Both the position numbers and the translations under genes were made by a program. DNA of 64,000 nt, taken from the IMG/VR virus record IMGVR_UViG_3300035212_003113, positions 307,676-371,675 of that record; one strand, given 5' to 3'. Shown here one piece after another: positions 33,812 through 63,335 of the stretch (its first letter is position 1; every line of letters starts with the position of its first letter). The notes under the pieces are model-generated. The model had not been told where the DNA came from. It was given only the letters and a program-made list of their open reading frames with translations, and did no database searches.

Positions 33812-33900
33812 GCACTACACCTGTTTAATTAGATTGCACTGCATTGACTCTATTTTTAATATTACTGAGTGATGGAAACCCTGCTCAACAAGAGGAAAAG

Positions 33901-43771: not shown

Positions 43772-44005
43772 ATGACCACCGCCGCCGTCACCACCGCCGC
43801 CCTCGCCGTCAACGCCCTCGCCGCCGCCCTCGATGCCGTCCGCGCCGCTCACGCCGCGTCACCGTCCTGCCCGGCGGCGGCCGCCGCGTTGGCGGTTACG
43901 GAGGCCGCGCTGGAACTCGCAAACCAAGGGCTCGACTCCGCCATCGGGGCGGATTCCATCGACTGGCGCCCGGGGCTTTGCGAGAGTCTCGTCGCCGGGG
44001 AATGA
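43772..44005 (+). CDS. cassette gene, Ala-rich hypothetical protein
   Basis: Preceded by element, leader L1 and GAGG. Confidence 0.7.
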   Translation: MTTAAVTTAALAVNALAAALDAVRAAHAASPSCPAAAAALAVTEAALELANQGLDSAIGADSIDWRPGLCESLVAGE

Positions 44006-44032
44006 CCCCGGCCTTCCCTCTCACCCTTCCGA

Positions 44033-44063
44033 CCCCGGCCACGCGCCGGGGTTTTTTTATTTT
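44033..44063 (+). terminator. intrinsic terminator, representative of cassette terminators
   Basis: CCCCGGC-CACGC-GCCGGGG plus T-tract; similar CCCCGGC..GCCGGGG+T hairpins near 44711, 45112, 48650, 49200. Confidence 0.8.
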
Positions 44064-44261
44064 CTGTCCGCCGTCGTCGCACGCCTATGTCACGGTCAAG
44101 GTCTAGGGCGGGGCGTCCCCGGCGCCAGCCCCGGCACGGGCCGGGGCTTTTCTTTTGCCCGGTCTCGAACCAGGCGAAATCCTAAAGACATTATCTTTTG
44201 ATCCTGTATGTCGAGACAGGGATCAGTCCATCAACCCCTTCCCCCTGTCTGTGAGGCCGTC

Positions 44262-44696
44262 ATGACCGCTTTCAATGACACGTTCCCCATCGTCGGCATG
44301 ACTGCCAAGTCCGTTGGACTCTGTAAGGACAAAGACGGCGGGGACGCCGTCCGATTCACGTTCGCGGACGGCAGCGAGTGGTTGATGCACCACTCGCGCA
44401 GCTGCTGCGAGTATGTTGGCCTCACGCAGGTCGACGGCGACCTGTGCGACCTTGTTAACTCCCCGCTCGTCATGGCGGAGTGCGCGGGCGAGATTGTCGA
44501 CGACATCGACGAGGACGGCCACTCGCTCGGAACAAGCGGTTGGACGTTCTACCGCTTCGCCACGGGGAAGGGCTACGTCACCCTGCGCTGGCAAGGCAAT
44601 AGCAACGGGTATTATTCAGTCGAGGTCTCTTTCTATCAGACGAAAGAGTCCGCGTCGATATCGTTCTATGATAACGACGACGACGACAACTACTAA
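44262..44696 (+). CDS. conserved phage hypothetical protein (CCE...WTFY...SNGYYS family)
   Basis: HHSRSCCEYV..VDGDLCDL, WTFYRFATGKGYVTLRWQGNSNGYYS; start re-called after GAGG. Confidence 0.75.
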   Translation: MTAFNDTFPIVGMTAKSVGLCKDKDGGDAVRFTFADGSEWLMHHSRSCCEYVGLTQVDGDLCDLVNSPLVMAECAGEIVDDIDEDGHSLGTSGWTFYRFATGKGYVTLRWQGNSNGYYSVEVSFYQTKESASISFYDNDDDDNY

Positions 44697-44828
44697 CCCG
44701 TAGTGAATCGCCCCGGCCCTGCCGGGGCTTTCGCTTTTCCGGGTTTCTTTCCCGGCCCCGGCCGGTCCTAAAGACATTATCTTTTGATCCTGATGCGCGG
44801 GACAATCCAGTCCCGTTTGGAGGCCGCC

Positions 44829-45089
44829 GTGACCATCCGCCGCACTGCTACCATCGTTGATGCCACCGCCGTCCGCACGGCGGTCATCGCCGCCCGTCTG
44901 CGGGCCGCCTACAGCGAGGCCGGTGACGCTGAGGCGGCCCGCATTCATCGGGGGCAGCTCGACGACGGTACGGTGGTGGTGGGGGTGCTTGACGCCCCTC
45001 CGCCCCCGCCGACGGAAGCGGAGTTGGTAGCGGAGCGCATCCGGGCGATGCGCGCCCGTATGGGTGGCGCGGCCCGCCCGCTCCGGTGA
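44829..45089 (+). CDS. cassette gene, hypothetical protein
   Basis: GTG start after GGAGG downstream of element 44764. Confidence 0.65.
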   Translation: MTIRRTATIVDATAVRTAVIAARLRAAYSEAGDAEAARIHRGQLDDGTVVVGVLDAPPPPPTEAELVAERIRAMRARMGGAARPLR

Positions 45090-45241
45090 ACCCGGCCCGC
45101 CGCTTCTCTCGCCCCGGCCCTGCCGGGGTTTTCTTTTGCCCGGTCTCGAGCCTGGCCCGTCCTAAAAACATTTCTTTTTGATCTTGTATGTCGAGACAGG
45201 GTCCAGTCCGTCAACCCCTTCCCCCTGTCTGTGAGGCAACC

Positions 45242-45604
45242 ATGAAGACCACCCGCGCCACCACCGCCGCCGTCAACGCCGCCATCGGGCGCGCCCACGC
45301 CCTCCTCTCCTTCGCCGCGCAAGCGGCTGAAGACGCCGACCTCGCCGCCACCACCGCCGCCGCCTACGGTGACGGCGGCGAAGCAGCCGCCTACGGAGCC
45401 GCCGCCGCCGCATGGGCGGCCAGCGGCGACGCCGCCGCCCGAAAGGGGGCAATCCTCGCCCCCCTCGTCGAGGGGGGGCGCATCACCCCCGCCCGCGCGG
45501 AGGAGGTGGTCAACGACCCCGCTTACTATCCCCTGGGGGACGAGGTCCTCCAAGACGAAGACGGAGTTTCCTACTCCGTCTGGGGGCACCCGGTTTACTG
45601 GTGA
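45242..45604 (+). CDS. cassette gene, Ala-rich hypothetical protein
   Basis: MKTTRATT after leader L1 and GAGG. Confidence 0.7.
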   Translation: MKTTRATTAAVNAAIGRAHALLSFAAQAAEDADLAATTAAAYGDGGEAAAYGAAAAAWAASGDAAARKGAILAPLVEGGRITPARAEEVVNDPAYYPLGDEVLQDEDGVSYSVWGHPVYW

Positions 45605-45742
45605 CCCCCGCCCCCCCGACCCCGCCCTAACCCGGCGGGGTTTCCGCTTTTCCGCTTTTCTTTCCCGGCCCCGGCCGGTCCTAAAAACATTTCTTTTTGA
45701 TCCTGTTAGATGTCAGAACAACCCGCAACACCCGGAGGCAGT

Positions 45743-45952
45743 ATGTCTAGCTATGACTGCATGTTTGAGCGCCTGAGCGCGGCTTCGGCCGCCGACAAGG
45801 CCGAGACCCCCACCGCCACCACTCCCGAGTGGCGCCTGCGGCCCACCCCGGGCCGGGACATCTGCTACTACTGCGGGACCGACAATGGCCCGCTTAGCGG
45901 GGAGTGCAGCTCCCGGCAAGGGCACGATTGCTATCACTGCGGCGGGAACTAA
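45743..45952 (+). CDS. cassette gene, small Zn-finger-like protein
   Basis: CYYCG...CSS...CYHCGG; GGAGG upstream. Confidence 0.65.
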   Translation: MSSYDCMFERLSAASAADKAETPTATTPEWRLRPTPGRDICYYCGTDNGPLSGECSSRQGHDCYHCGGN

Positions 45953-46092
45953 CTCCCGCCCATCGCCCCGCCCCGCCAGCAAGGCGGGGCCTTGCCGTTT
46001 TCTGCGTTTCTTTCCCGGCCCCGGCCGGTCCTAAAGACATTCTCTCTTGATCCTGTTAGGCGTCAGAACAACCCGCAACACCCGAGGCTCGC

Positions 46093-46425
46093 ATGGCGTT
46101 TGTGAACTTGACCCCCCACACCATCACCGTCGTCGACCAAGCGGGCGCGCCCGCGCTCGTCCTGCCCGCCGACGGGACCGTCGCCCGCGTGGCGACAAAG
46201 ACGGCCGTGGCCGCCGTCGTCGACGGCGTGGAGATTTTCGAAACCTCTTTCGGGGAGGTCGTCGGCCTCCCCGCGCCGGCCCCCGGCGTGACGTGGGTTG
46301 TCTCCGGCCTCGTCGCCGGACACCCGGCGGTGCGGGGCCGTACCGACGTCCTTTCCCCCGGGGCGCTTGTGCGCGGCCCCGATGGTCAGCCGGTTGGCTG
46401 CCGGGGCTTGAGCCGTCCCGCGTGA
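46093..46425 (+). CDS. conserved viral hypothetical protein (NLTPH family)
   Basis: NLTPHTIT...ARV...GLPAP...VVSGLVA...RTDVLSPG..VR..DG...GCRGL. Confidence 0.75.
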   Translation: MAFVNLTPHTITVVDQAGAPALVLPADGTVARVATKTAVAAVVDGVEIFETSFGEVVGLPAPAPGVTWVVSGLVAGHPAVRGRTDVLSPGALVRGPDGQPVGCRGLSRPA

Positions 46426-46539
46426 GCGGCTCCCCGGTCAATCGACCGGGCTGCCCGGCTCGTCACCCGTCCTAAAAACATTATCTTTTGATCCTGTTAG
46501 ACAGAAGCCGGAACGAAACAAACCGGCACGGAGGATACG

Positions 46540-47007
46540 ATGAAGACCCTGACGATTATGCGTGGCGTCCCCGGTAGCGGCAAGAGCACCCTTGCCAAGG
46601 TGCTCGCCAACGTCCCGGGCGTCGAGACGGCTCCCGTGTTTTCCACAGATGATTTTTTCATGGTCGATGGCGAGTACCGCTTCGACGGGTCGAAGCTCGG
46701 GGCCCACCACGCGGCCAACCTCCGCCGCACGGCGGAGGCGATGGAAGCCGGTGTTACCCACGTCATCGTGGACAACACTATGACTCAAGGATGGGAGGCG
46801 CGGGAATATGTCCGCGCCGCGACCTTCCACGGATACAGGGTGCAGTTCGTCGAGCCGCGCACGCCGTGGGGGCGGGACGCGGCGGAGTGCGCCGCCCGTA
46901 ACTCTCACGGGGTTCCCCTCGCCGCAATCGAGGGGATGCTGGCCCGGTGGGAGCCGGACCTCACCCCGGAAGCGTGCTTGAACGCCCGCGCCCCGTGGGA
47001 GGGGTGA
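46540..47007 (+). CDS. P-loop kinase, AAA_33/N4BP2-like
   Basis: MRGVPGSGKST, FSTDDFF, VIVDNT, HGVP...IEGML. Confidence 0.85.
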   Translation: MKTLTIMRGVPGSGKSTLAKVLANVPGVETAPVFSTDDFFMVDGEYRFDGSKLGAHHAANLRRTAEAMEAGVTHVIVDNTMTQGWEAREYVRAATFHGYRVQFVEPRTPWGRDAAECAARNSHGVPLAAIEGMLARWEPDLTPEACLNARAPWEG

Positions 47008-47110
47008 GAGATGCCCGGCGCCGGCCGGGCTCTTTCCCCGGCCGGTCCTAAAAACAGAAAGTTTTGATCCTGATAGGCAGAGCGGCAAACAACACGCCGC
47101 AGGAGGCAAC

Positions 47111-47425
47111 ATGCGTACCGAAACGACCCTCTCTGTTCGCATTGGAATCGTAAATGCCATGGCCCGCCGGGCCGGGGACGCGGGCCTGGCTGCCCGTGCA
47201 GATCAGGTCACGGATCTCGCCTTTGCCTTGCTCGCCATCGGCGGCGACGCCGGGCCGGTGGTGGAGGCACTGGCCAACCTCGCCGGAGAGTTGGAAACGG
47301 CGATGGTACGCCGTGGCTTCAACCGCCGCGAGATTCCGGCGGTTATCCGCCGGGACTGCGAAGCTGCCGGGCTGCCGGTGGCCGATGCCACGGTCACGGT
47401 CCGCAAGCCGGGGGTGGGGCTGTGA
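47111..47425 (+). CDS. cassette gene, hypothetical protein
   Basis: AGGAGG upstream; follows element 47044. Confidence 0.7.
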   Translation: MRTETTLSVRIGIVNAMARRAGDAGLAARADQVTDLAFALLAIGGDAGPVVEALANLAGELETAMVRRGFNRREIPAVIRRDCEAAGLPVADATVTVRKPGVGL

Positions 47426-47568
47426 AGCCGTGGAACATCCCTGACGACGAAACCGATAACCGCCCCGCCCGCATGGGCCGGGGCCGCCCGGCGGGTGAGT
47501 CGCCCCGCCCGACAAAGGGTCGTCCCCGCTCGTGGGATGCCCGCCGAAGGGAAAAGCGCCGCGACTAG
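47422..47568 (+). CDS. small Arg/Pro-rich peptide
   Basis: GTG overlapping the upstream stop; MKPWNIPDDETDN...WDARRREKRRD. Confidence 0.45.
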   Translation: MKPWNIPDDETDNRPARMGRGRPAGESPRPTKGRPRSWDARRREKRRD

Positions 47569-47650
47569 CGGACCGGGGGAGCAATCCCCCGCCCGCCTTC
47601 CGCCGGTCCTAAAAACATTCTTTTTTGATCTTGATAGGCAAGAGGTGAGT

Positions 47651-47749
47651 ATGACCCGCCGCGATGCTGCCGATGCGTTTTTCTTCCTTGCCGGTATGTT
47701 TGTTCTCGTGTTCGTCTATCCCGTCTTGTTCTACGGGATGGCGGGTTAG
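47651..47749 (+). CDS. 32-aa membrane peptide
   Basis: GAGGTG SD; MTRRDAADAFFFLAGMFVLVFVYPVLFYGMAG; has its own element (47605). Confidence 0.6.
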   Translation: MTRRDAADAFFFLAGMFVLVFVYPVLFYGMAG

Positions 47750-47825
47750 TCTCCGGGGCCGGTGCCCCCTTTCTCGCCGGTCCTAAAAACATTCTTTCCT
47801 GATCCTGTTAGTCACGGAGGCAGCG

Positions 47826-48038
47826 ATGAAAGACAAGGCTGGCAAGATGACGGTGACCTTTCCCGACGGCAGCAAGCTGACGGCCATGGCTCCGATGGGG
47901 CTCCCCGGTACGCTGGCCACGGTCGGATGGGAGGCCCACCGCGCCCGGGCGGCGATAGCCGAGATGGACATGACAAGTATTCAAAGGCTCCTGCGCCACT
48001 CCGATGCGCTGCGGGCGCTCCGGCAAGCGGGCTACTGA
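47826..48038 (+). CDS. cassette gene, hypothetical protein
   Basis: GGAGG SD after element 47779. Confidence 0.7.
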   Translation: MKDKAGKMTVTFPDGSKLTAMAPMGLPGTLATVGWEAHRARAAIAEMDMTSIQRLLRHSDALRALRQAGY

Positions 48039-48126
48039 TAAGGAATCGGGCCGGGGCTTGTCCCCGGTGCCGAGCCGGACCGGTCCTAAAAACATTCTTT
48101 TCTGATCCTAATAGGCGGAGGTCAGC

Positions 48127-48291
48127 ATGGCTCAATCGGTTCGGATTCGCATCGCTGGAAACTTCGGGCACGCGCTTTGCCTGTGCCCGGGGTGTTGTCC
48201 CCGTGGCGGCGGGGGCAAGGCGGCCGTCAAGCGCAAGACGGCGCGGGCCGTCCGGCGTTCCGAGCGCCGGGAGATCGAGACGGAGGATTAG
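48127..48291 (+). CDS. 54-aa Cys/basic peptide, missed by the ORF track
   Basis: GGAGG at 48117; MAQSVRIRIAGNFGHALCLCPGCCPRGGGGKAAVKRKTARAVRRSERREIETED. Confidence 0.65.
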   Translation: MAQSVRIRIAGNFGHALCLCPGCCPRGGGGKAAVKRKTARAVRRSERREIETED

Positions 48292-48370
48292 CCGTCCCGG
48301 CCCGGGGAGTCGCATCCCCGGTCCCGAACCTGCCCGGTCCTAAAAACATTATCTTTTGATCTTGATAAGC

Positions 48371-48628
48371 ATGAACAACAACGACAGCCTCACTGCCCGA
48401 TCCAACATCGTCGCGCTCCGGCGCGCCGACCGCGATGCGGCTGCCGCGCGCCGCGCGGGCTACGGAACTGACCGCGCCGCTTGGTGCGGCGTCGATGCCG
48501 GCCTTGCCAAGCTCATGACGGAGGCGGGCCTTTTCGCCCGCCTGCCCGCTGAGGCCCGCGAGCAGTGGGACGCCGGTTGTCTTTCCGCGTCGGAAGCTTT
48601 CGCTATCATCGGCGACGAACTATTTTAG
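48371..48628 (+). CDS. cassette gene, probably leaderless
   Basis: ATG falls exactly on the inferred +1 of element 48336; no SD. Confidence 0.65.
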   Translation: MNNNDSLTARSNIVALRRADRDAAAARRAGYGTDRAAWCGVDAGLAKLMTEAGLFARLPAEAREQWDAGCLSASEAFAIIGDELF

Positions 48629-48772
48629 TTCGCCGCCCACCCTTCCACCGCCCCGGCCCCGCCGGGGCTTTTCTTTTGCCAGGTCTCGAACCTGGCAGCG
48701 GTCCTAAAAACAGATATTTCTGATCCTGTTAGACATCGGAACGGCGGCACGGGCCGCACAACGGAGGATAGC

Positions 48773-49183
48773 ATGGCTTCGCAAAAGCGCTCTCTCGCCC
48801 TTGACATTCGTCTCGCTGGCATCGATTTCCCGTCGGACGTGGGCCGGGCGTTGGAGTTCTACGTTAACGGCAAGCTCCTGTTTCGTGGGGACCGTGCGGG
48901 ATTCGAGCGGCTCTGGGCCGCTCTCCCAAATATCCATGCCGCTTTCGGCGGGATGGAGTCTGAAGGCGTGCGCCCCTTCCGCACGGGGACCGTGCGCTTT
49001 CAGCCGGGCCGCAACCCGCAAGTCGGATACGTCTACACGTTGGAGGACGTGGCCGCCTGCATGCTGTTCCGTCATGAAGTCGAGGAAGCTCTTGACGGGC
49101 GCGGGGCGTTCCTGCCGGACGACGTGCTCGAAGATACTCACTCCTGCGCAGGGTGGGGATGTGTTTGTCACAGTGAGAGCTAG
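48773..49183 (+). CDS. cassette gene, hypothetical protein
   Basis: GGAGG SD after element 48700. Confidence 0.7.
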   Translation: MASQKRSLALDIRLAGIDFPSDVGRALEFYVNGKLLFRGDRAGFERLWAALPNIHAAFGGMESEGVRPFRTGTVRFQPGRNPQVGYVYTLEDVAACMLFRHEVEEALDGRGAFLPDDVLEDTHSCAGWGCVCHSES

Positions 49184-49339
49184 CCTCACAGCGGGCCTCG
49201 CCCGGCCCCGGCCTAATCAGCCGGGGTTTTTTTGTCTTTTTTTGCGGGCGTCATCGGTCCTAAAAACATAACTTTTTGATCCTGATAGGTGTCCAGCGGT
49301 TCCCGGCGCTCCTGCCGGCCCGCCCTGCCCGAGGTTAGC

Positions 49340-49648
49340 ATGACCAACGTCATCGGCATTATTCTCTCTACCGACTACGGCACCCTCGAAATCGAGGGGG
49401 TGGAGGCCGGCGCTCTTGCCCGCCTGCGCCGTGACCCGGTACTGGTCGCGGCCGTGGAGGCGGCCGACGACGACGCCTTTGCGGCTCGTCTCATCGACCT
49501 CCACCCGGAAGTGGCGGACTATGAGGTCCCGTCAACCGACTTCCTGCGGGTGACGCGCCTGCCCGCCGGCACCCGGTACGGGATTGTCATGGGCGACGGG
49601 GATACCGAAGCGCTCGTCTCGGAGCTTGACCTTACCGAGACGGCATGA
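49340..49648 (+). CDS. cassette gene, hypothetical protein
   Basis: GAGGT SD; MTNVIGIIL. Confidence 0.65.
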   Translation: MTNVIGIILSTDYGTLEIEGVEAGALARLRRDPVLVAAVEAADDDAFAARLIDLHPEVADYEVPSTDFLRVTRLPAGTRYGIVMGDGDTEALVSELDLTETA

Positions 49649-49743
49649 CCGTCCGGGCGGGGGCCGGGTTCACCCGGCTCCGCCCCTCTCCTCCCCGGTC
49701 CTAAAAACAGATTCTTTTGATCCTGTTAGACATGGAGGCCACG

Positions 49744-50010
49744 ATGAAGCTGACAAAGAAGGAAGCTCGCAACGTTCGCGTTCTCGCCGCGCAGCACGAC
49801 GGGTTGGACGTGCTCGCCAGTGCGGCGGGCATCGCCCGGGGCGACCGCTCGGTCGCTTACCCGGTGGAGAACCGGGGCCGGGTGGGTTGGTTCAAGCAGG
49901 TGTGCCACCTCGCCGGCCGCGAGACGGGTCGCAACCACTGGGTTGCGGCGGTGGTCCGCGCCAACCGTCCCGCTAACGCGGTGGCGATTCTCCGGGCGCT
50001 CGAAGACTAG
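49744..50010 (+). CDS. cassette gene, hypothetical protein
   Basis: GGAGG SD; an in-frame ATG at 49732 also sits on the inferred +1. Confidence 0.7.
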   Translation: MKLTKKEARNVRVLAAQHDGLDVLASAAGIARGDRSVAYPVENRGRVGWFKQVCHLAGRETGRNHWVAAVVRANRPANAVAILRALED

Positions 50011-50192
50011 CGGGTGACGGGCCGGGGCGCGTAGCCCCGGACCCGAGCCTACCGGTCCTAAAAACAGATTCTTTTGATCCTGTTAGACAGAACGGCGGCG
50101 ACGAAACGATACGATGCGCCGCACATAACGGGTTAAACGTAGCGCCGGTGGTCGGCGGTACGCTAGGCCCTAGAAACAAAAGGGAAAGCACA

Positions 50193-50705
50193 ATGTCGCT
50201 CATCAAGTTTGGTTCCAACACCGGCAACTCTGGCAACACCCTTGCTCTCCCCGCTCCCCGTGTGACGGCGCCCGCCCCTATGGCGCCGATGCCTCTCCCG
50301 GCGCCGGTCGCTGCGACGAGCACGAGCCCGGACATTGCGGCTCTTATGGCGAGGCTTGCGGCGGCCGAGGCGGGGCTCGCTACAGAGAAGGCCCGGGCCG
50401 ATGCGGCCGAGGCTGCCCGTGCGGCGAGTGGCGGTAGCCGTGGATACAGCATGAAGGCGTCGGAGAAGGGCGCTATCTCGATCTACGGCGTCTCTACCAA
50501 GTTCCCGGTGACGCTCTACGCTCCCCACCTCGTGGGAATCATCCGTGATCTGGTTATGACCGGCAAGGCGTCGGCGTTCCTCCGGGAGAATGCGGCGAAG
50601 CTTTCGGTCAAGGTCGACGGCACGGGCCAGGCGGGCACGGGTGCTTCGGAATCGGCAGTGCGCAGCCTTGCCGATGAGCTTGATCGGGTCACCCGCAAGG
50701 CGTGA
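50193..50705 (+). CDS. MSLIK paralogue 1 (coiled coil + SEKGAISIYG..FPVTLY domain)
   Basis: Near-colinear similarity to 53453..53896 and 54869..55297. Confidence 0.8.
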   Translation: MSLIKFGSNTGNSGNTLALPAPRVTAPAPMAPMPLPAPVAATSTSPDIAALMARLAAAEAGLATEKARADAAEAARAASGGSRGYSMKASEKGAISIYGVSTKFPVTLYAPHLVGIIRDLVMTGKASAFLRENAAKLSVKVDGTGQAGTGASESAVRSLADELDRVTRKA

Positions 50706-50826
50706 ACGGTAGGAAGGGGGCCGGGTTCGCCCGGCCCTTTCCTTCCCCGCCGGTCCTAAAAACAGATTCTTTTGATCCTGTTAGACAAGCGGCGACGACG
50801 AAACAAACGCCGCGAATGGAGACGCG

Positions 50827-51219
50827 ATGCGCAAGCAGTCTGCTCGTTCCCTCACCCTTGCTCTTTCCCGTGCCGCTGCTGACGTGCTTGTCGGCAAGCT
50901 GTCAAGCCTTAACTATGGGAATACCACCACGCCGGGGCCGCGTCAAACGGCCATCCTCGCAGATATTGCCCGCCGCAAGGCAACCCGGCGCGGGCGTCGG
51001 GCTGCTACTGCCGCTGAGATTGCGGAAACGCAAGGCATCCCGGTCTCCAACGTGGAGCGGGCGCTGTCCTGTCTCCGGTGCCGTGGCCTTGTCGACCGCC
51101 GGGGCACCCGGTTCGGCCTTACCATCCGGGGGACGGAAGCTGCCGCCCTGTTCTCCGGGGTGCAGGTGCCCGACGGCATCGGGCTGGTCCTGACTGGTCA
51201 TGCTATCCGCAAGGTGTGA
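50827..51219 (+). CDS. winged helix-turn-helix protein
   Basis: RQTAILADI...TAAEIAETQGIPVSNVERALSCLRCRGLV...LTIRG. Confidence 0.75.
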   Translation: MRKQSARSLTLALSRAAADVLVGKLSSLNYGNTTTPGPRQTAILADIARRKATRRGRRAATAAEIAETQGIPVSNVERALSCLRCRGLVDRRGTRFGLTIRGTEAAALFSGVQVPDGIGLVLTGHAIRKV

Positions 51220-51320
51220 CCGTCCGGGGCGGGTCGGGGGAGAAATCCCCCGGCCTTTCCTTCCGGCCCCGGTCCTAAAGACATACTTACCTGATCCTGA
51301 TAAGCACAACGGAGGCCGGT

Positions 51321-51515
51321 ATGAAAAGCAAGTTTTCTTGCCCTACTTGTAAGCAACGCCCTGCGTGTGACTGTGCACCCCCGGACTATGCCCGGATGCG
51401 CCGGGAAAGCGAGCATGCACCGTCGACTGCCGTCTATGTTGCCGCCCTGCAACGTGCATGGGAGCACCGTGCGATGATGCTCGAAGCGGACGAGACCCGC
51501 GACCACCGCGATTAG
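51321..51515 (+). CDS. small Cys-rich protein
   Basis: CPTC...CDC; GGAGG SD. Confidence 0.65.
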   Translation: MKSKFSCPTCKQRPACDCAPPDYARMRRESEHAPSTAVYVAALQRAWEHRAMMLEADETRDHRD

Positions 51516-51533
51516 CGGGTAGGAGGACTGCGC

Positions 51534-51716
51534 ATGAAAGAGCTTTTCTTTTGCATTGATCAGGAACACGTTGATGCCGGGGAGTTCCTGCCCGGCGAGA
51601 TCGGGCACTGGGCAGTGCGCGGACTCCCCGGCGGGGTGCTCGTATTCAACAACCGCTATCTAGCCGAACTGGTGTGGGCGGGTATCGCACCTCACCACGG
51701 CTACGCTCACAACTAG
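51534..51716 (+). CDS. hypothetical protein
   Basis: AGGAGG SD. Confidence 0.65.
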   Translation: MKELFFCIDQEHVDAGEFLPGEIGHWAVRGLPGGVLVFNNRYLAELVWAGIAPHHGYAHN

Positions 51717-51795
51717 GGGATCGGGGCGGACACCTGCCCCTTTCCTTCCCGGTCCTAAAAGCATACCGGGCCGATCTTGATAGCCGGGAGGCACG

Positions 51796-51987
51796 ATGGA
51801 ACGGCTCCGACAAACGCTCCGGGCGTTGTTCGCCCCGCCGCATTATCCGCCCGGCTATGCGCCGGTGTCCGGTCATGCGGTGCATTCATACGAGAAAAAC
51901 TATTTTCTGGCGGACACGCGCCGCCGTGCGAGGGTAGCCTATGAAGCCGCGAAACGCAATCTTGTTGCAGATGATCCTAACCCGTAA
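51796..51987 (+). CDS. cassette gene, hypothetical protein
   Basis: GGAGG SD after element 51751. Confidence 0.65.
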   Translation: MERLRQTLRALFAPPHYPPGYAPVSGHAVHSYEKNYFLADTRRRARVAYEAAKRNLVADDPNP

Positions 51988-52178
51988 AGGCGGGGTCATG
52001 CGCGACCGCAAGGCGGAATCGAAACGCCGGGCGTGCCGGGGGCGAGTCCGCCGGGACCGCGACGACGAGTGACCGGCTGGGGCGCCAGCCCCACCTGGCT
52101 CGCGACCGGTCCTAAAAACATACTCCTCTGATCCTGTATAGCAGAAGCCGGAACGAAACCAACTAGCAGGAGGCAGCT

Positions 52179-52472
52179 ATGTCCAAGGTTCACTTCAACA
52201 CCGGTCGTCTTTATGGTCCCCATGGTCAACGCATCGTGGCTATGCAGTGCCCTTCCGGCGAAGTTGTGTTCGTTGACCGGGACCGGGGCATCCTAGGTGC
52301 CTTGACTGAAAAGTCGGGGGAGATGGGCGCCAACACCGGAGGCGTCAAGGTGTTCCCGCCGTTGACGGCGGCGCAGGTACAGGCGGAAGTCAGTCGCCGC
52401 TATGTCGGCAGCTACGCTTATCAAAGCAGCTCACTGGCCTACCAGTTTGAGGCGCAGCTTCTCGCGGACTGA
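52179..52472 (+). CDS. cassette gene, hypothetical protein
   Basis: AGGAGG SD after element 52108. Confidence 0.7.
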   Translation: MSKVHFNTGRLYGPHGQRIVAMQCPSGEVVFVDRDRGILGALTEKSGEMGANTGGVKVFPPLTAAQVQAEVSRRYVGSYAYQSSSLAYQFEAQLLAD

Positions 52473-52556
52473 GGTCCGGCCCCGCACGCGCGGGGTTCTT
52501 TGCTGAGCCGGTCCTAAAAACAGATTCTTTTGATCTTGTTAGACACGGAGGCGACG

Positions 52557-52850
52557 ATGCGCAGCAGCGAGCAGGTTTTCGTGGCAGTCGTTTCAACCTC
52601 CCGCCACTTTGGCGGGCATGAGGAAGGCGGCTGGTGGTTCGACTGGTCGAATGTAGAAAAGGCGTGGTCTTTTGACAACCCGCGCCGGGCGCGCCGGTTT
52701 GCCCGGCGGCTGGAACGCGAGGAAGCGCATTACGCGCCGCGTCATGACCGCTTCTCGGTTCTCGGCGGGACCGATGTAGAAGTCCGCCGCACGCGGGACC
52801 CGGAAGCACTCGCCGAATGGCAGAGCCGGCAGCGCCCGCGATACGAGTGA
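52557..52850 (+). CDS. cassette gene, hypothetical protein (GGxEEGGWW motif)
   Basis: GGAGG SD; FGGHEEGGWWFD. Confidence 0.7.
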   Translation: MRSSEQVFVAVVSTSRHFGGHEEGGWWFDWSNVEKAWSFDNPRRARRFARRLEREEAHYAPRHDRFSVLGGTDVEVRRTRDPEALAEWQSRQRPRYE

Positions 52851-52945
52851 GCGGACAACGGACCGGGGCCTAGCTCCGGTCCCGAGTCCGGCCGGTCCTA
52901 AAAACATAAACTTTTGATCCTGATAGGTGCCACAACGGAGGCTGC

Positions 52946-53146
52946 ATGCAGGTGACGGAGATTGCGATTGACGGCAACGGCAACGCGACGGTGAACGCCC
53001 GCGAGGGCGGGATGGAAGCGGCGCTCGCCCGCGCCCCGTGGGCGCTGCGGGGATGGGCGGCGGAACGCTGCAATCTGGAAATGACGGGGCGGGAGTACCT
53101 GACCCGCCGCGCCGAGATGCTGCGGGCGCTGGCGGACGTCCGCTAG
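52946..53146 (+). CDS. cassette gene, hypothetical protein
   Basis: GGAGG SD after element 52894. Confidence 0.7.
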   Translation: MQVTEIAIDGNGNATVNAREGGMEAALARAPWALRGWAAERCNLEMTGREYLTRRAEMLRALADVR

Positions 53147-53452
53147 GGGACGGGGTGCCGGGGGGGCACCTGACTCCGGACCGGGCCTAAAAACATACTC
53201 CTCTGATCTTGTCCCGCATACGTGGGAGGTGTGCCATGCGGGGCTAAAAGATTGCAAAACTTATCTGCAAGGGCCAACGGCGAGTCCGGGGGCGGGCGTC
53301 CTATTGTCCGAAAAGCGCGGTCGCCACCGGTCCTAAAAACAGCTTCCCCTGATCTTGTAGGGTGTCCCGGCGACGACGCCGCGACGCAGCGCCGATGACG
53401 CAGCGCCCGATGGTCGGGGGTTGCGGATAGGCTAGAACGCAGGATACAAGCC

Positions 53453-53896
53453 ATGTCGCTTATCAAGCTCCCCGCCCCTGTCGCCGCCACCGTTGCCACG
53501 CCCGTCACGGCGCCGTCTCTGTCTCCTGACATTGCCGCGCTCATGGCCCGCCTCGCAGCGGCGGAAGCTGCGGTCGCGACGGAAAAGGCCCGCGCCGACG
53601 CCGCTGAAAAGGTCAAGGCGGAGTCGCGGGGTTATTCTGCGAAGGCATCGGAAAAGGGCGCGGTTTCCATCTACGGGGTTAGCGCCCGCTTCCCTGTCAC
53701 GCTGTATGCCCCGCACTTTGTCGGGGTGTGCCTTGACCTTATCATGACGGATAAGGGGGTCAACTTCCTGCGTGAAAACGCGGATAAGTTGTCTGTCAAG
53801 GTGGACGGCACCGGGCAGGCCGGGACGGAGGCGAGCCGGGCGGAAGTGCTGCGCCTCGCAGACCGGCTGGCCGGTGCGGTTGCCCGCCTGAAGTGA
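53453..53896 (+). CDS. MSLIK paralogue 2
   Basis: SPDIAALMARL...KASEKGAVSIYGVSARFPVTLYAPH. Confidence 0.8.
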   Translation: MSLIKLPAPVAATVATPVTAPSLSPDIAALMARLAAAEAAVATEKARADAAEKVKAESRGYSAKASEKGAVSIYGVSARFPVTLYAPHFVGVCLDLIMTDKGVNFLRENADKLSVKVDGTGQAGTEASRAEVLRLADRLAGAVARLK

Positions 53897-54868
53897 GGCG
53901 GGCCGGGGGTGGGCGGGGCGACCCGCCTGCCCCTTTTCCGGCGACCGGCGCCCGGCCGGACCCGCCGGGTTCGCCACCGGCCCTAAAAACATACTCGCCT
54001 GATCCTGTAGGACGTACTCTGGTGACAAACCGGGGCGGGCGAACTATTCCTTTTTTTATTGCCCGGCGCGGGGCAGTCCGGTCGTCGGTCCTAAAAACAT
54101 ACGCCGACGATCCTGACAGACGGGTCAACGGGACAACCGGGGGCGGGATAGGTGCGTCGATTGCAAGAAAAAACCGGGGAACAATAACAGGATCGGGAAA
54201 GCCCGTTTTTAGGACCGGGATTGCCTGCAAAGTTTATGCCCCTTTTTATTGTGCCGGTCCTAAAAACAGCTTCTCCCGATCCTGTTACGCGTCAACGCTA
54301 TAGTCGGGGGCGGGGAGAGGTGTATCCGGTGGATTAGTTATGTGGACAAAAGATCCGTTTTGTTTTTGCGTTTTATGATAGCTGACAGGGGCCGGCGGTC
54401 CTAAAGACGGAGTCCGCCGATCCTGTAACCTGCGTCAACGGGACAACCGGGGACGGGTGCGGTGTGCCTAGTGGCTTTGTAATGCTGATGCAATGTTTGC
54501 AGGATCTTTTCTATCTGTTATTAGGATTGCGGCTTCAGTCCTAAAGACGGTGTTGTGTGATCCTGTTGTGCTTTTACTGATTCTGGCTTTCCCTAACGGT
54601 AGAGAGCTGGGAGATAACTTTATAATCTTTAGCAGGCCGCCCGGGCTTGCTGGATAGCTATTGTCTCGCGCGCGTTGATAGGGATGCTTGGTAGGTTGCT
54701 AGATAGTACCTGCTAGAAAGCAGTTTTTCTTGACAGGGGGCGGCGGTCCTAAAGTCGGGGTCCGCCGATCCTGTAGAGCAGAACGGCGGCCCACTACATA
54801 GCCGCAAAGGTGAAGCGTTATACCCGGTGGTCGGGTATCTCGTGGAGCCTAAATACAGGGAGAGCATC

Positions 54869-55297
54869 ATGTCGCTCATCAAGGTCGGAACCCCCGTCGC
54901 CAACAACACCGTCACCTCTGTCAGCCCGGATGTGGCAGCTCTCATGGAGCGTCTCAAGGCTGCCGAGGCTGCGCTGGCAGCAGAGAAGGCCCGTGCCGAT
55001 GCTGCTACCAAGACTAAGGGCGAGGCGCGTGGTTACACCGCCAAGGCCAGCGAGAAGGGTGCTATCAGCATCTACGGTGTGTCCGCTCGCTTTCCTGTCA
55101 CGGTCTACGCTCCCCACTTTGTGGGGATTGCGCTGGACCTCATCATGACCGACAAGGGAGTGGCGTTTCTCCGGGAGAACGCTGATAAGCTCTCTGTCAA
55201 GGTGGATGGTACCGGGACCGCTGGTACCGAGGCTAGCCGTGCCGAGGTTCTCCGGCTGGCTGACCGTCTCGCTGAAGCTGTCGCCAAGCTGAAGTGA
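54869..55297 (+). CDS. MSLIK paralogue 3
   Basis: SPDVAALMERL...KASEKGAISIYGVSARFPVTVYAPH; start re-called. Confidence 0.8.
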   Translation: MSLIKVGTPVANNTVTSVSPDVAALMERLKAAEAALAAEKARADAATKTKGEARGYTAKASEKGAISIYGVSARFPVTVYAPHFVGIALDLIMTDKGVAFLRENADKLSVKVDGTGTAGTEASRAEVLRLADRLAEAVAKLK

Positions 55298-55658
55298 GGC
55301 AGGCAGGTGGGGGCCGGGATAACCCGGCTCCCTTTCCTGTTAGAATGACAGCTTACCCCTACACAGGTGGCAATAATGCTGCGCTTTTTGGAACTTCCTC
55401 CTAGCCGTCCTGACGTCGAGCCTACGTGGACGGAGTGTATTGCGATGGCCTTTCAATGTGCCCGCTTTGCGCCGCTCGAAGCGGACAGGGCACGGGCCAT
55501 GCATGCTGCCTGTAGCTGGTTAGAAAAAGGCTTGTTTTGGCTTGATTGAAGCCACTACCGGGGAGGGGCGACTCTCCCCGGTACCTACAACCTGCAACAC
55601 ACCTGCCAACGGGACAACCGGGGGCGGGCGATCTATTCGCGCGCGCGTTGTGTGCTCC

Positions 55659-56025
55659 GGTCCTAAAAACAGCGATTTCTGATCCTGATACAGTTGCCCC
55701 TCTGTCAGGCAGAGGATTGCAGCGTTCCGGTCCTAAAGACGGGTGTTGCTGATCCTGTAGGGGTTTGCCGATTGCCTGCAATCCTCTGCCCTTGCTCCGT
55801 CCTAAAGACGGGGATCTGTGATCCTGTATCGGTTTGACCTGTGTGTGTCTATATACTTGTTTCTATGTGAAACGCGCCGGTCCTAAAAACAGATTCTTTT
55901 GATCCTGTCGCCCTTTGTCTTTTTGTCAACTTCACGCGGTCCTAAAAACATACTCGCCTGATCCTGTTAGCATTTTCTTTTTTCTAGACTCGCTCCAGTC
56001 CTAAAGACGGTGTGCCCTGATCCTG
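55659..56025 (+). repeat. ORF-free cluster of six 29-bp elements with 30-52-bp gaps
   Basis: Starts 55659, 55729, 55798, 55879, 55938, 55997; gaps 41, 40, 52, 30, 30. Confidence 0.9.
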
Positions 56026-56281
56026 TCCCGGTTGCCCCGCTGTTTGCTTCTTCTCTCTTTTTCTTGTGCCTAGAGCGGCTGGCCTATTGCCGGCAGACAA
56101 CCGCTTTGCAGCGTTTACCCGTCTGAAGAATAATGGGCAAAAGATACCAAGGGAACCGCCACCACCCACCGGGAGCTAAAACCTCTCTTGATGCCGGTAT
56201 TACAGCTGTACTAAGTATTAGACAGCTGCTAGTTGACCCGCGCCGGCTCTAAAGCCGGGTATGCCGCTGTATGGAGTTGTC

Positions 56282-56776
56282 ATGAAACTTGACAAAGTCG
56301 CGCTGTCTTATGCAAGATCCAGCGAAGAAGCTATATCTATACTAACAGAGAGCAGACCAGAGTTTGTCCCGCTGCTGCATCCTGATGATTTGCGTAAGAT
56401 AACAAAATATATTGTTGCCTGCAATAACCATAATCATAAAGTCTTCAAGGTTACTATACCCCTGTTTGCTTGGTACGAGCATAGGATATGGCCAGATCCT
56501 TCTGCCTTTCCTAGCAGCACAGGAATCATTTACTCTATCATGGTGTGGGTAAAGTCTCCAAAAAGAGTTCTGAAAAAGAACTTCACTCTTTTGTATCCAT
56601 TTGATCTGGGTTCTAATGCCGCATTAGACAGGGAAAGCATAAAGGAAATAATCCGATTGAAGGTAGAGAAAATAGAGAGTATGAAGGTTAGCTATAAGGC
56701 TGCCGCTGATAAGCTAAAGAATATGGCAATCGTGACAATCGGGGCCGGGCCTAAAGTCGGGTCCGGCCGATCCTGA
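56282..56776 (+). CDS. MKL-signature protein inside the cassette array
   Basis: MKLDKVAL after GGAG; stop codon lies at the right end of element 56747. Confidence 0.65.
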   Translation: MKLDKVALSYARSSEEAISILTESRPEFVPLLHPDDLRKITKYIVACNNHNHKVFKVTIPLFAWYEHRIWPDPSAFPSSTGIIYSIMVWVKSPKRVLKKNFTLLYPFDLGSNAALDRESIKEIIRLKVEKIESMKVSYKAAADKLKNMAIVTIGAGPKVGSGRS

Positions 56777-56891
56777 GGGACGACCGACGAACCGCCGCAG
56801 CATACAGGATGCGGTGGATCTAACAGTAGCGCCGGTCCTAAAGCCGGTGTCCCCCGATCCTGTAGGACGAACCGCAAACCCCGGAGACGCC

Positions 56892-57200
56892 ATGACCCTG
56901 CCTATTGTTGGTGAGAAGCCCGCTCATACCGGCAGCCTGTCGGAGATTCGTACTTGGATGCGTGCTCCTAGCACCCGTGATGCCTGGATGGCACAGAATG
57001 TACTGCTGGGTGGTGCGTTCGCTACCTACATGGCAGACCAAGAGCCTGACGATGTTCGCCGAGTTTTTTGCATTGAGCCTGTCTGTCAGTTGAAGGAGGA
57101 TGCGGGCATCCGTGGTCGTGGTATCCACCTGTTTGCTCTGAAGGACTTTGAAGACGCGCTGTGGACTGGGTTTGCCGCTACCATCAACCGCCGTCGCTGA
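56892..57200 (+). CDS. cassette gene, hypothetical protein
   Basis: GGAG SD after element 56834. Confidence 0.65.
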   Translation: MTLPIVGEKPAHTGSLSEIRTWMRAPSTRDAWMAQNVLLGGAFATYMADQEPDDVRRVFCIEPVCQLKEDAGIRGRGIHLFALKDFEDALWTGFAATINRRR

Positions 57201-59422: not shown

Positions 59423-59634
59423 CCGCTGCTGATGACCGTCTGACAAGCATTGTCGAGGAGCGGGATGCTGCCCATTTCGAGGCGAAACTTCTGCGCGAAG
59501 ATAATGAACGCCTGCGAACGGCACTAAAGCGGTTGATGGATGCTGCCCCTTTAGAGGACAACGGCAGCACACAACTTGTCGACGCTTTTATTCACGCCCT
59601 AAATACTCTTGACCGAACCAGAGATGAGCCATGA
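59419..59634 (+). CDS. small coiled-coil protein
   Basis: EERDAA...DNERLR; ATGA overlaps. Confidence 0.6.
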   Translation: MTAADDRLTSIVEERDAAHFEAKLLREDNERLRTALKRLMDAAPLEDNGSTQLVDAFIHALNTLDRTRDEP

Positions 59635-60011
59635 AGATTGATGATTTCCTAGAGGCCGACGAGAATGGCTGGCACATTGACTGGTACACGCTGCACGCCA
59701 ATGAAGCGGATGTTATCTACGCAAAGGAAGAACACGGGAAAGATATTCAGGCTGGAGATGTGCTATGGCGCTTGCCTAAAGCGATTGGTCCTATTGACAT
59801 TGACTACAATGGCTGGACCGGCTATTATCTCAAGTGCAGGGAGAGTGATGCCCTACTCGCTGCTGCCGCTCCCGATCTGCTAGCCGCCTGTGAACTACTG
59901 CTAAAGGCACAAAGCTGTGCAGACGCAGGCGAGGGAGATGGCTTTGGGTATTATGTCGATGCTGTTCAAGCAGCAGGCATCGCTATTGCCAAAGCAAAGG
60001 GCAAGTCATAA
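59631..60011 (+). CDS. hypothetical protein with AAAPDLL motif
   Basis: LLAAAAPDLLAACE...AIAKAKG. Confidence 0.65.
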   Translation: MKIDDFLEADENGWHIDWYTLHANEADVIYAKEEHGKDIQAGDVLWRLPKAIGPIDIDYNGWTGYYLKCRESDALLAAAAPDLLAACELLLKAQSCADAGEGDGFGYYVDAVQAAGIAIAKAKGKS

Positions 60012-61533: not shown

Positions 61534-61845
61534 ATGACCACAAAATACACACCCGGACCGTGGGACTGGCGAGACACATCCGATTTGCGTCAGGCGAAAT
61601 CAACGAGGACCGACGGGAGGTACGGCGAATCTGTGCTCTGTGCGTCCTATGATTATGATCGTGGACCGTACCTGGATACGACGGATGCCAACCGAGCCCT
61701 GATCGGTGCAGCGCCTGACCTGCTGGCGGCGCTGGTTCATCTGGAGCGTATGGTATCTAAAATGCGCCAAACATTAGACGACGACGACCCGGCGCTAGAG
61801 TCAGCCCGCGCCGCCATCGCAAAGGCGACGAAGGAGCAGTCATGA
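61534..61845 (+). CDS. TPGPW...ANxxLIxAAPDLL family hypothetical protein
   Basis: YTPGPWDW; ANRALIGAAPDLL. Confidence 0.7.
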   Translation: MTTKYTPGPWDWRDTSDLRQAKSTRTDGRYGESVLCASYDYDRGPYLDTTDANRALIGAAPDLLAALVHLERMVSKMRQTLDDDDPALESARAAIAKATKEQS

Positions 61846-62899: not shown

Positions 62900-62960
62900 T
62901 CCGTACAACGGCTGACATTATCTAGAGAGGCAACTTTCTCTAAGAATTTTGGAGCAAAGC

Positions 62961-63335
62961 ATGAGCAAGCACACACCTGGACCATGGGCTGCCGGCCGAG
63001 CTGATATGCAGACCATTGTAGAAGGTTATCCCTGCAAATGGATCTATGGTCCAGACGATTCTTATTTGGCCTTGGCAAGCGGCCGTGCATCCGATAACTG
63101 GGATGAAGTTATGGCCAATGCCCGGCTAATCGCAGCCGCTCCAGCACTACTTGCATTTGCCGAGCGCGTACTAGCCCGCTGGCATTCCCATGACGGCCAG
63201 CTAGATCGCATTGATGATGCGCTCGCTGCGCTTGCAGCAGCTACCGGCAAAGAATCAGAAGATATTCTCCGTCAATCAGAAAGTGCTGTACGGCAAATGC
63301 TGAAGGAACTGTATGGAGAAGATACAGAGGAATAA
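62961..63335 (+). CDS. TPGPW...ANARLIAAAP family hypothetical protein
   Basis: HTPGPW; ANARLIAAAPALL. Confidence 0.7.
   Translation: MSKHTPGPWAAGRADMQTIVEGYPCKWIYGPDDSYLALASGRASDNWDEVMANARLIAAAPALLAFAERVLARWHSHDGQLDRIDDALAALAAATGKESEDILRQSESAVRQMLKELYGEDTEE

What the first reader, a model, noticed from the sequence alone, without database searches (positions are those of the whole stretch)
54188..56033. Second class of the element: all 9 copies with TT at the initiation position lie in ORF-free clusters
Seen: the copies at 54188(-), 54500(-), 54537, 55659, 55729, 55798, 55879, 55938 and 55997 all have TT at the inferred +1/+2, while all 38 other copies have a purine at +1. Both boxes stay intact, and two central spacers are identical to those of purine-class copies (AACAGATTCTTTT at 55879 = 49697/50054/50752/52510; AACATACTCGCCT at 55938 = 53979). 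A 9/9 versus 0/38 split is unlikely by chance. Inference: binding-competent but non-initiating sites, acting as an RNAP/sigma decoy or loading depot, a transcription roadblock, or a centromere/ori-like protein platform.
Basis: partly seen in the sequence, partly recalled or inferred. Interest (0 to 1): 0.85.

Follow-up and report, generated by a model that had tools for sequence, protein, structure and literature searches.

The report
Promoter subclass with a GTTT start
An uncultured 372-kb phage keeps a conserved second version of its own promoter, starting G-T-T-T instead of C-purine, that occurs only in two gene-free control regions, where it most likely drives non-coding or throttled transcription rather than acting as a dead decoy.

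Summary
The window holds 47 copies of (CGG)nCCTAAA-N13-GATC(C/T)TG. Nine have TT at positions 7-8 after box 2 and 38 have a purine at position 7. All nine TT copies lie in two ORF-free gaps flanking a 142-aa gene. No other exact-box TT copy exists in the 371,675-bp contig.

The class is conserved. Six related phage contigs carry TT copies in the same syntenic gaps, giving 45 distinct TT copies. Their consensus is G6-T7-T8-T9 with a T-rich downstream sequence. The coding class has C6-R7 and a T-poor downstream sequence.

The "non-initiating" inference is not supported for three of the nine copies. One sits directly upstream of a two-hairpin RNA with covariation. Two are antisense promoters 123-125 nt from G-box promoters. 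Relatives carry purine-class copies at these same positions.

The six-copy tandem array (55661-56033) remains functionally open. My best reading is that these are real but throttled promoters. They would start at G6 or T7 on a T-tract, which is prone to slippage or abortive cycling. A decoy or an origin role is not excluded. I rate this a new variant of a known kind, of moderate interest.

The parts
54180..54214 (-). TT-class copy. It is the antisense promoter facing the G-box promoter at 54089, 123 nt away.
   Evidence: Orthologous minus-strand copies lie 122-128 nt from a G-box promoter in all 8 loci examined. Their start dinucleotides are TT, G-TT, TC, AA or GG.
54492..54526 (-). TT-class copy with TCCTAAT in box 1. 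It is the antisense partner of the G-box promoter at 54399, 125 nt away, and lies back to back with 54539(+).
54539..54573 (+). TT-class copy directly upstream of the conserved two-hairpin RNA.
   Evidence: The orthologous copy is TT in L039, L046 and L050 and GC in L044, L045, L049 and L041.
54582..54653 (+). Conserved structured non-coding RNA. Hairpin 1 is 54582-54611 and hairpin 2 is 54629-54653.
   Evidence: Across 8 sequences 92.5% of cells are paired and 7 pairs show compensatory changes. No shuffle of 500 reaches the observed covariation score, and slid controls pair at 36-49%. G-U pairs place the RNA on the + strand.
55661..55695 (+). TT array unit 1 (start region cag-TTG).
55731..55765 (+). 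TT array unit 2 (ggg-TTTG). It lies inside a perfect 15-bp inverted repeat, 55708-55722 / 55776-55790.
   Evidence: (I13).
55800..55834 (+). TT array unit 3 (cgg-TTTG), followed by the most AT-rich stretch of the array.
55881..55915 (+). TT array unit 4 (ccc-TTTG, then a T5 run). Its spacer is identical to that of four coding-class copies.
55940..55974 (+). TT array unit 5 (gca-TTTT, then a T6 run). Its spacer is identical to that of 53981.
55999..56033 (+). TT array unit 6 (cgg-TTG), followed by a 40-nt pyrimidine tract.
   Evidence: AT skew down to -0.6.
54089..54147 (+). Purine-class promoter plus G-box (GTCAACGGGACAACCGGGGGCGGG). This is the sense half of the first convergent module. A second module starts at 54399.
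55605..55650 (+). G-box without its own promoter, followed by CTATTC and a CGCGCGCG run. It is conserved immediately upstream of the array in L039, L046, L044 and L045.
56150..56212 (+). Conserved tail of the gap: the block GGAACCGCCACCnCCCACCGGGA and CCGGTAT(A)TAC-type repeats.
54869..55297 (+). 142-aa gene of unknown function between the two gaps. A paralogue lies at 53453-53896 and a third lies near the contig start.
   Evidence: 84 homologues, all unnamed; no Pfam, PDB or fold match.
56282..56776 (+). AT-rich gene present in this phage only. It has an SD but no canonical copy of the element. The nearest upstream promoters are the TT array.

Best explanation
The element is this phage lineage's own two-box promoter. 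Box 1 is CGGnCCTAAA, followed by 13 nt, then box 2 GATCCTG, with the start 6-7 nt downstream.

The TT copies are a conserved subclass of that promoter. Their start region reads G-T-T-T followed by T-rich sequence. The coding class reads C-purine followed by T-poor, SD-bearing sequence. The subclass is used only for non-coding transcription inside a conserved regulatory hub around the 142-aa gene:
- Two copies are antisense promoters facing G-box RNA promoters at a fixed distance.
- One copy precedes a structured two-hairpin RNA.
- Six copies form a tandem array that occurs once per genome. It lies just upstream of a block of small genes, each with its own promoter. That block includes a DUF1281_C protein and, in relatives, ArdA and Tad3, so I read it as an early/anti-defence block.

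Shown here: the class exists, is conserved, is confined to non-coding DNA, and is interchangeable with purine-class copies at three orthologous positions.

Inferred: the polymerase binds these copies and starts at G6, or at T7 on the T-tract. The homopolymeric T-tract and the weak rU:dA initial hybrid would make initiation slippage-prone or abortive and sensitive to UTP. The copies would then be throttled or conditional promoters. They would hold polymerase and give little full-length RNA. Only the promoter boxes and the GTTT start are conserved in the array, not the transcribed sequence. The array's function therefore lies in initiation or occupancy itself, not in a specific RNA product.
For: - Promoter identity: 32 of 38 purine copies precede an SD plus ORF. 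The SD core never starts before position 7. Copies elsewhere in the contig are almost all gene-associated and carry a purine.
- Class logos: among 254 distinct copies, 46 have T at position 7, and 45 of those have TT. 33 of 45 have TTT. Position 6 is G in 34 of 45. Downstream T content is 38% in the TT class against 12% in the purine class.
- Conservation: TT copies lie in the syntenic gaps of L039, L046, L044, L045, L049 and L050. The array is 56% identical to that of L039, against 83% for the flanking gene.
- Orthologous TT/purine swaps occur at the two-hairpin RNA promoter and at the antisense promoters.
- Uniqueness: no other exact-box TT copy exists in the 372-kb contig.
- Precedent: homopolymers of at least 3 nt at or next to the start site cause reiterative initiation, low full-length yield and NTP sensing, including template A+1A+2A+3 (PMC8812562).
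- Gene 56282-56776 has only the TT array upstream.
Against: - No transcript data exist, and start sites are inferred.
- The polymerase or sigma factor that reads the element was not identified, so bacterial start-site rules may not apply.
- Only 5 of the 9 window copies (33 of 45 overall) have the 3 or more T's needed for efficient slippage.
- The two-hairpin RNA could be read through from the purine promoter at 54399.
- The six array copies have no purine-class orthologues, so the interchangeability argument does not reach them directly.
- The next genes downstream in L039 and L046 have their own canonical promoters, so the array is not needed to express them.
Confidence: 0.45

Rival explanations
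1. Polymerase or sigma sink. The array copies bind the transcription machinery but never escape productively. They would buffer or sequester it, or block read-through from upstream units.
For: - Boxes are intact while the start region is non-canonical.
- Only the boxes and GTTT are conserved, not the downstream sequence.
- Copy number varies from 1 to 7 among relatives, as expected for a dosage-type array.
- The array is a single site in the genome.
Against: - Three TT copies sit where relatives have normal promoters that drive conserved RNAs.
- G at position 6 offers a usable start.
- Units spaced 52-59 bp apart are closer than a typical roughly 75-bp open-complex footprint (established knowledge for bacterial RNAP), so not all sites could be filled at once.
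- Relatives L041 and L047 do without TT copies.
Confidence: 0.17
2. Transcription-activated replication origin. The gene-free promoters, G-rich boxes, T-rich tracts and CCGGTAT repeats would together form an origin. Short transcripts would open the DNA or prime synthesis, as at T7 phi1.1A/B or T4 oriF/oriG.
For: - Promoters without genes, unique in the genome.
- G-box with G-runs at the 5' end of short transcripts, plus a fixed antisense partner. This is reminiscent of primer and antisense RNA pairs.
- A local GC dip to 41-46% at 55840-55960.
- Repeat motifs in the tail of the gap.
Against: - TT copies are missing from L041/L047, although the G-boxes, the hairpin RNA and the tail repeats are kept there. 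TT copies themselves are therefore dispensable.
- No initiator gene was recognised next to the array.
- The GC dip is modest.
- Genome-wide skew could not be examined, because only the window and scattered loci were readable.
- The T-rich transcripts would form weak rU:dA hybrids, which are poor for forming R-loops.
Confidence: 0.15
3. Binding platform for another protein, such as a regulator, a partition protein or a packaging protein. In this reading the TT/GTTTG motif next to box 2 is part of a composite site and not a transcription start.
For: - GGTTTG(N)C-like words recur after box 2. In 4 copies the motif is shifted by one base.
- L046 has five units at exactly 52 bp, about five helical turns.
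- A tubulin-family gene is present in the window.
Against: - Spacing is irregular in the window (59-81 bp) and in L039 (54-140 bp).
- The tubulin gene is 44 kb away and has no adjacent repeats.
- Two independent assemblies of about 371.7 kb break at different points. The array is therefore not at a fixed genome end.
- No candidate binding protein was identified. The 142-aa protein has no recognisable fold.
Confidence: 0.1
4. Neutral by-product. Tandem duplication of one variant copy would explain the shared TT without any function.
For: - Array units are tandem, so they are not independent.
- Spacers shared with distant copies suggest recombination among copies.
Against: - TT(T) and G6 are retained in 45 distinct copies across seven phages, while the surrounding sequence has diverged to 56% identity.
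- T at position 7 is followed by T in 45 of 46 cases.
- TT copies also occur at three non-array positions.
Confidence: 0.05

Closest known systems
Reiterative ("stuttering") initiation promoters of bacteria: pyrBI (AATTTG), galP2 (ATTT), codBA and upp
   Same: A purine followed by a run of T's, or the T-run itself, sits at the start site. The known consequences are low full-length yield, release of U-ladders and sensing of the UTP pool (PMC8812562; the galP2, codBA and upp details are from my own knowledge).
   Different: - Here the feature defines a whole promoter subclass of a phage-specific promoter.
- It is used only for non-coding units and occurs as a six-copy tandem array.
- A quarter of the copies have only TT.
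- The polymerase is unknown and no slippage has been observed.
Phage T7 gene-free promoters: the tandem early promoters A1-A3 before gene 0.3, and the replication promoters phi1.1A/B, phiOL and phiOR
   Same: Clusters of promoters in ORF-free DNA, lying next to early anti-restriction genes or origins (established knowledge).
   Different: - The T7 promoters have canonical start nucleotides.
- A1-A3 sit at a fixed entering end of the genome. Here two assemblies break at different points.
- The copies here carry a distinct start motif.
E. coli "promoter islands" and other non-productive RNAP-binding clusters
   Same: A high density of promoter-like sites and little evidence of productive mRNA (my own knowledge).
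   Different: - Promoter islands are degenerate AT-rich sigma-70-like sites in horizontally acquired DNA.
- Here the sites are exact copies of a specific 40-bp promoter and are conserved between phages.
Convergent sense/antisense RNA control modules such as ColE1 RNA II/RNA I, P1 c4 and P22 sar. This comparison applies to the two minus-strand TT copies.
   Same: A promoter faces another at a fixed short distance, giving complementary short RNAs of about 60 nt overlap.
   Different: - There is no sequence or Rfam relationship.
- The function of the G-box RNA is unknown.

Membership tests
The phage's own two-box promoter (the element) | Box 1 CCTAAA and box 2 GATC(C/T)TG separated by 13 nt | tested here: met
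   Eight of nine TT copies are exact. Copy 54526(-) has one mismatch in box 1.
The phage's own two-box promoter (the element) | Pyrimidine at position 6 and purine at position 7 (the start) | tested here: not met
   TT copies have G6-T7-T8. Across all 254 copies the commonest position 6-7 pairs are CG 70, CA 64 and TG 57.
The phage's own two-box promoter (the element) | A transcription unit lies downstream in the same orientation | tested here: inconclusive
   There is no ORF downstream of any TT copy. A covarying RNA follows 54539. G-box antisense targets lie downstream of the two minus copies. The array has only unconserved T-rich sequence, followed at a distance by gene 56282.
Reiterative-initiation promoters (pyrBI / galP2 type) | Homopolymer of at least 3 nt at or immediately after the start site | tested here: inconclusive
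   TTT is present in 5 of 9 window copies and 33 of 45 copies overall. The rest have only TT.
Reiterative-initiation promoters (pyrBI / galP2 type) | Non-templated U-ladders and UTP-dependent output | not testable with these tools
   This needs transcription assays or 5'-end RNA-seq.
Sigma-70-type bacterial promoter | TTGACA-17-TATAAT-like hexamers | tested here: not met
   The consensus scan finds 3 weak sites in 53300-56900, against 1.4 expected from shuffles, and none is at an element. GATCCT shares only the A and the two T's (A-11, T-10, T-7) with TATAAT; this comparison is by inspection.
Transcription-activated or iteron-type replication origin | Gene-free promoter(s) next to an AT-rich unwinding region and initiator binding repeats, at a site conserved across relatives | tested here: inconclusive
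   The promoters are gene-free and unique. GC dips to 41-46% and the tail of the gap carries repeats. However, TT copies are absent from L041/L047, no initiator was found, and whole-genome skew is not available.
Entry-end tandem early promoters (T7 A1-A3 type) | Location at the fixed leading end of the genome | tested here: not met
   The window is the last 64 kb of one contig. The same region lies at 215-222 kb of an independent 371,689-bp contig. This implies a circular or permuted map.
Type III (TubZ/TubR) partition centromere | Iterons adjacent to tubR-tubZ, with regular phasing | tested here: not met
   The tubulin-family gene is at 10182-11528, 44 kb from the array. Unit spacing ranges from 52 to 140 bp.
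Known RNA families (Rfam 15) | Match at or near the gathering score | tested here: not met
   No match at gathering score in the window. Only chance-level matches (E of 0.37 or more) in 53850-56300.

The most novel reading that the evidence does not exclude
The six-copy array is a DNA device, present once per genome, built from start-site-altered copies of the phage's own promoter. It would work through polymerase occupancy and not through its RNA product. It could be a sink or timer that titrates the phage-specific transcription machinery, or that senses the UTP pool through poly-U slippage. Alternatively it could be the transcription-primed origin of a jumbo-phage lineage with no cultured member.
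Probability: 0.2. Interest if true: 0.75.

Novelty: new variant of a known kind. Interest (0 to 1): 0.5.

Why it matters
- It gives a clean, testable example of a phage promoter family split into two classes by the start region alone: C-purine with a T-poor leader for genes, and GTTT with a T-rich leader for non-coding DNA.
- If the TT class is slippage-prone or non-productive, it would show a phage using start-site chemistry, rather than a repressor, to throttle transcription or to hold its polymerase.
- The analysis also maps a conserved non-coding control hub next to the early/anti-defence genes of an uncultured 372-kb phage group. The hub holds G-box sense/antisense modules, a covarying two-hairpin RNA and the tandem array. 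This is a useful entry point for studying the regulation of that group.

Tried and rejected
1. Antisense pairing of TT-copy leaders with the G-box RNA. Duplex energies are no better than for purine-class leaders, except for the true antisense copy 54214(-).
2. Array RNAs as pyrimidine-rich anti-SD regulators of the early mRNA leaders. Pairing is no better than for shuffled sequences.
3. Known RNA families. There is no Rfam hit and no tRNA or tmRNA.
4. A structured RNA in the tail of the gap (56030-56262). The z-score is -0.72.
5. Function of the adjacent 142-aa protein. I found no Pfam, PHROG-level, PDB sequence, fold or Atlas lead.
6. Identifying the polymerase or sigma factor. The large ORFs of the window and of nine other loci of the contig show none. 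Most of the 372 kb was not readable here.
7. Cultured relatives. There is no DNA match in the phage collection. The only protein match is a 25%-identity tubulin hit to Bacillus phage G.
8. The metagenome-wide DNA pattern scan gave only single, chance-level hits. One viral scan was wasted on a mis-spaced pattern.
9. The literature search found no description of this promoter.

Full report
**What the window is**

The window is the last 64 kb of IMG/VR contig IMGVR_UViG_3300035212_003113, which is 371,675 bp long. It is a jumbo-phage genome. It encodes a DnaB-type helicase, ribonucleotide reductase, PhoH, a tubulin/TubZ-family protein and a 2397-aa ORF. It has no cultured close relative. An independent 371,689-bp assembly carries the studied region at 215-222 kb, and two further assemblies carry it unchanged. 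The sequence is therefore real. The genome map is circular or permuted, so the region is not at a fixed end.

**The element**

Searches find 47 copies of (CGG)[T/G/C]CCTAAA-N13-GATC(C/T)TG between 43119 and 63787. Shuffles predict 4.5. All but two copies are on the + strand.

- In 32 of the 38 purine copies an SD and ORF follow within 110 nt.
- Position 6 after box 2 is C or T, and position 7 is G or A.
- The SD core never begins before position 7 and begins exactly there nine times.
- One ORF has its ATG at position 7.

Further copies elsewhere in the contig are almost all gene-associated and carry a purine. Both boxes are conserved in every related contig examined. The polymerase or sigma factor that reads them was not found.

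**The observation**

The nine listed copies do have TT at positions 7-8, and the other 38 have a purine. All nine lie in two ORF-free gaps flanking a 142-aa gene at 54869-55297. Gap A is 53897-54868 and gap B is 55298-56260.

The stated spacer identities hold. The gaps also contain purine-class copies at 53981, 54089, 54258, 54399 and 54747. One TT copy has a mismatch in box 1.

A collection-wide scan for box1-N13-box2-N6-TT finds a cluster only in this contig, and within it only in these two gaps.

**The class is conserved and has its own signature**

Homologues of the 142-aa protein led to related contigs with the same gene order. The order is: the 142-aa gene, an ORF-free gap, then small genes that include DUF1281_C. 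ArdA and Tad3 lie nearby. This marks an early/anti-defence block.

TT copies sit in the syntenic gaps of L039, L046, L044, L045, L049 and L050. They are absent from L041/L047, L042/L043 and L048.

Over 254 distinct copies, position 7 is G in 135, A in 68, T in 46 and C in 5. Of the 46 with T, 45 read TT and 33 read TTT. Position 6 is G in 34 of 45 TT copies. Downstream sequence is 38% T in the TT class and 12% T in the purine class, and T-runs are longer in the TT class. Four further copies carry the same G-TTTG motif shifted by one base.

The window array is only 56% identical to that of L039, while the flanking gene is 83% identical. What is kept is the boxes and the GTTT start, not the transcribed sequence.

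**What the nine copies are next to**

1. Copy 54539(+) lies directly upstream of a two-hairpin RNA (54582-54611 and 54629-54653).
   - In eight sequences 92.5% of cells are paired and seven pairs show compensatory changes.
   - No shuffle reaches the observed covariation score, and slid controls pair at 36-49%.
   - G-U pairs place the RNA on the + strand.
   - The promoter copy in front of it is TT in four phages and GC in four others.
2. Both minus-strand TT copies face a purine-class promoter that drives a conserved G-box (GTCAACGGGACAACCGGGGGCGGG), at 123 and 125 nt.
   - Every minus-strand copy in all eight loci has this arrangement at 122-128 nt.
   - The start dinucleotide varies among TT, G-TT, TC, AA and GG.
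   - So at three positions TT and purine copies are interchangeable. The simplest reading is that TT copies initiate.
3. The other six form a tandem array (55661-56033) with spacings of 70, 69, 81, 59 and 59 bp.
   - A promoter-less G-box and a CGCGCGCG run precede it.
   - A pyrimidine tract, a conserved block and CCGGTAT-type repeats follow it.
   - Relatives have one to seven units with irregular spacing.

**Mechanism**

If GATCCT is the -10-like hexamer, the canonical start is position 6. This alignment is by inspection: GATCCT shares the A and the two T's (A-11, T-10, T-7) with TATAAT. Under it, the purine class starts one base later, at R7 after Y6. The TT class has its purine at position 6, followed by TTT.

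Homopolymers of three or more bases at or just after the start cause reiterative initiation. The yield of full-length RNA is low and depends on NTP concentration. This includes template-strand A+1A+2A+3 (PMC8812562).

I therefore favour throttled or conditional promoters. They would be occupied by polymerase, start on a U-tract and yield little full-length RNA.

It remains an inference for three reasons. Only 33 of 45 copies have TTT. The polymerase is unknown. There are no RNA data.

**Rivals**

- A pure decoy fits the conservation pattern and the copy-number variation. It is weakened by the orthologous swaps, by G6, and by units packed more closely than a polymerase footprint.
- An origin fits the uniqueness, the G-rich boxes with antisense partners and a modest GC dip. 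However, TT copies are missing from relatives that keep the rest of the hub, and no initiator or skew evidence is available.
- A platform for another protein is not supported by the spacing, by the position of the tubulin gene or by any candidate binder.
- Neutral duplication is unlikely given the retention of G-T-T(-T) across diverged copies.

**Ideas tested and dropped**

- Pairing of TT leaders with the G-box RNA.
- Pairing of array RNAs with early mRNA leaders.
- Rfam membership.
- A structured tail RNA.

**Verdict**

The thing is a new variant of a known kind: a promoter subclass defined by its start region, including a tandem array that occurs once per genome. Its exact role needs 5'-end mapping or in vitro transcription.

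Noticed in passing
window 43000-54000: This 11-kb block is 62-69% GC, against about 48% for the rest of the window. It is packed with small genes, each with its own copy of the promoter (spacer type AACAT/AACAG) and usually a preceding CCGGTCTCGAACC-type hairpin. The composition jump is sharp at about 43 kb.
   Followed up: partly
window 43152-43190, 43722-43760, 44213-44251, 45193-45231: Four promoter copies are followed by the same roughly 39-nt leader, GAGACAGGGAyCAGTCCrTCAACCCCTTCCCCCTGTCTG. Its ends are inverted repeats (GACAGGG...CCCTGTC). It is a shared structured 5' UTR in front of different ORFs.
   Followed up: no
window 54024-54049, 54124-54147, 54291-54314, 54434-54457, 55605-55628; also all relatives: The G-box family (GCCAAC/GTCAAC-GnGACAAnCGGGGGCGGG) comes in two flavours. 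One is followed by CTATTGTC and a T-run. The other is followed by ATAGGTGCGTC. It is more conserved between phages than the genes around it. The copy at 54119-54147 fits a G-quadruplex motif, but this is not conserved in all copies.
   Followed up: partly
window 55708-55722 and 55776-55790: A perfect 15-bp inverted repeat (GGCAGAGGATTGCAG / CTGCAATCCTCTGCC) brackets array unit 2. The 12-mer GATTGCCTGCAA also occurs at 54219-54230, next to the minus-strand copy.
   Followed up: no
window 56190-56230; L044 about 6040-6090; L045 about 5990-6040; L041 about 12560-12610: CCGGTAT(A)TAC / ACAGCTGTA repeats lie between the array and the next canonical promoters, with 2-4 copies per phage. They look like operator or iteron sites.
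   Followed up: partly
window 56261-56776: An AT-rich (35-48% GC) 164-171-aa gene is absent from L039 and L046. It has an SD but no copy of the promoter, and a box-1-only remnant (CTCTAAAGCCGG) lies just upstream. It looks like a recent insertion that would depend on read-through from the TT array or on a host-type promoter (weak TTTGCA-18-AATAAT at 56105-56134).
   Followed up: partly
every copy of the element: Box 2 always contains GATC, a Dam-type methylation site. 45 of the 91 GATC sites in 43-64 kb lie in box 2. Promoter activity could therefore be sensitive to methylation.
   Followed up: partly
window 48371-48628: An 85-aa ORF has its ATG exactly at position 7 after box 2 and no SD. It is a candidate leaderless mRNA.
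   Followed up: partly
window 53453-53896, 54869-55297; L038 6001-6411: There are three paralogues of a 142-147-aa protein per genome, with 84 unnamed homologues. The predicted fold is helical plus small sheets (pLDDT 72) and has no match. The protein always borders the non-coding hub.
   Followed up: yes
window 33844-41037: A 2397-aa ORF has only sub-threshold Pfam hits (ComP_DUS-like, collagen repeat). It may be a tail-fibre or virion protein.
   Followed up: no
window 59631-60011, 61534-61845, 62949-63335: Three small paralogous proteins share an N-terminal K(H/Y)TPGPW motif and a C-terminal AAPDLL/AAPALL helix. They lie in the early block.
   Followed up: no
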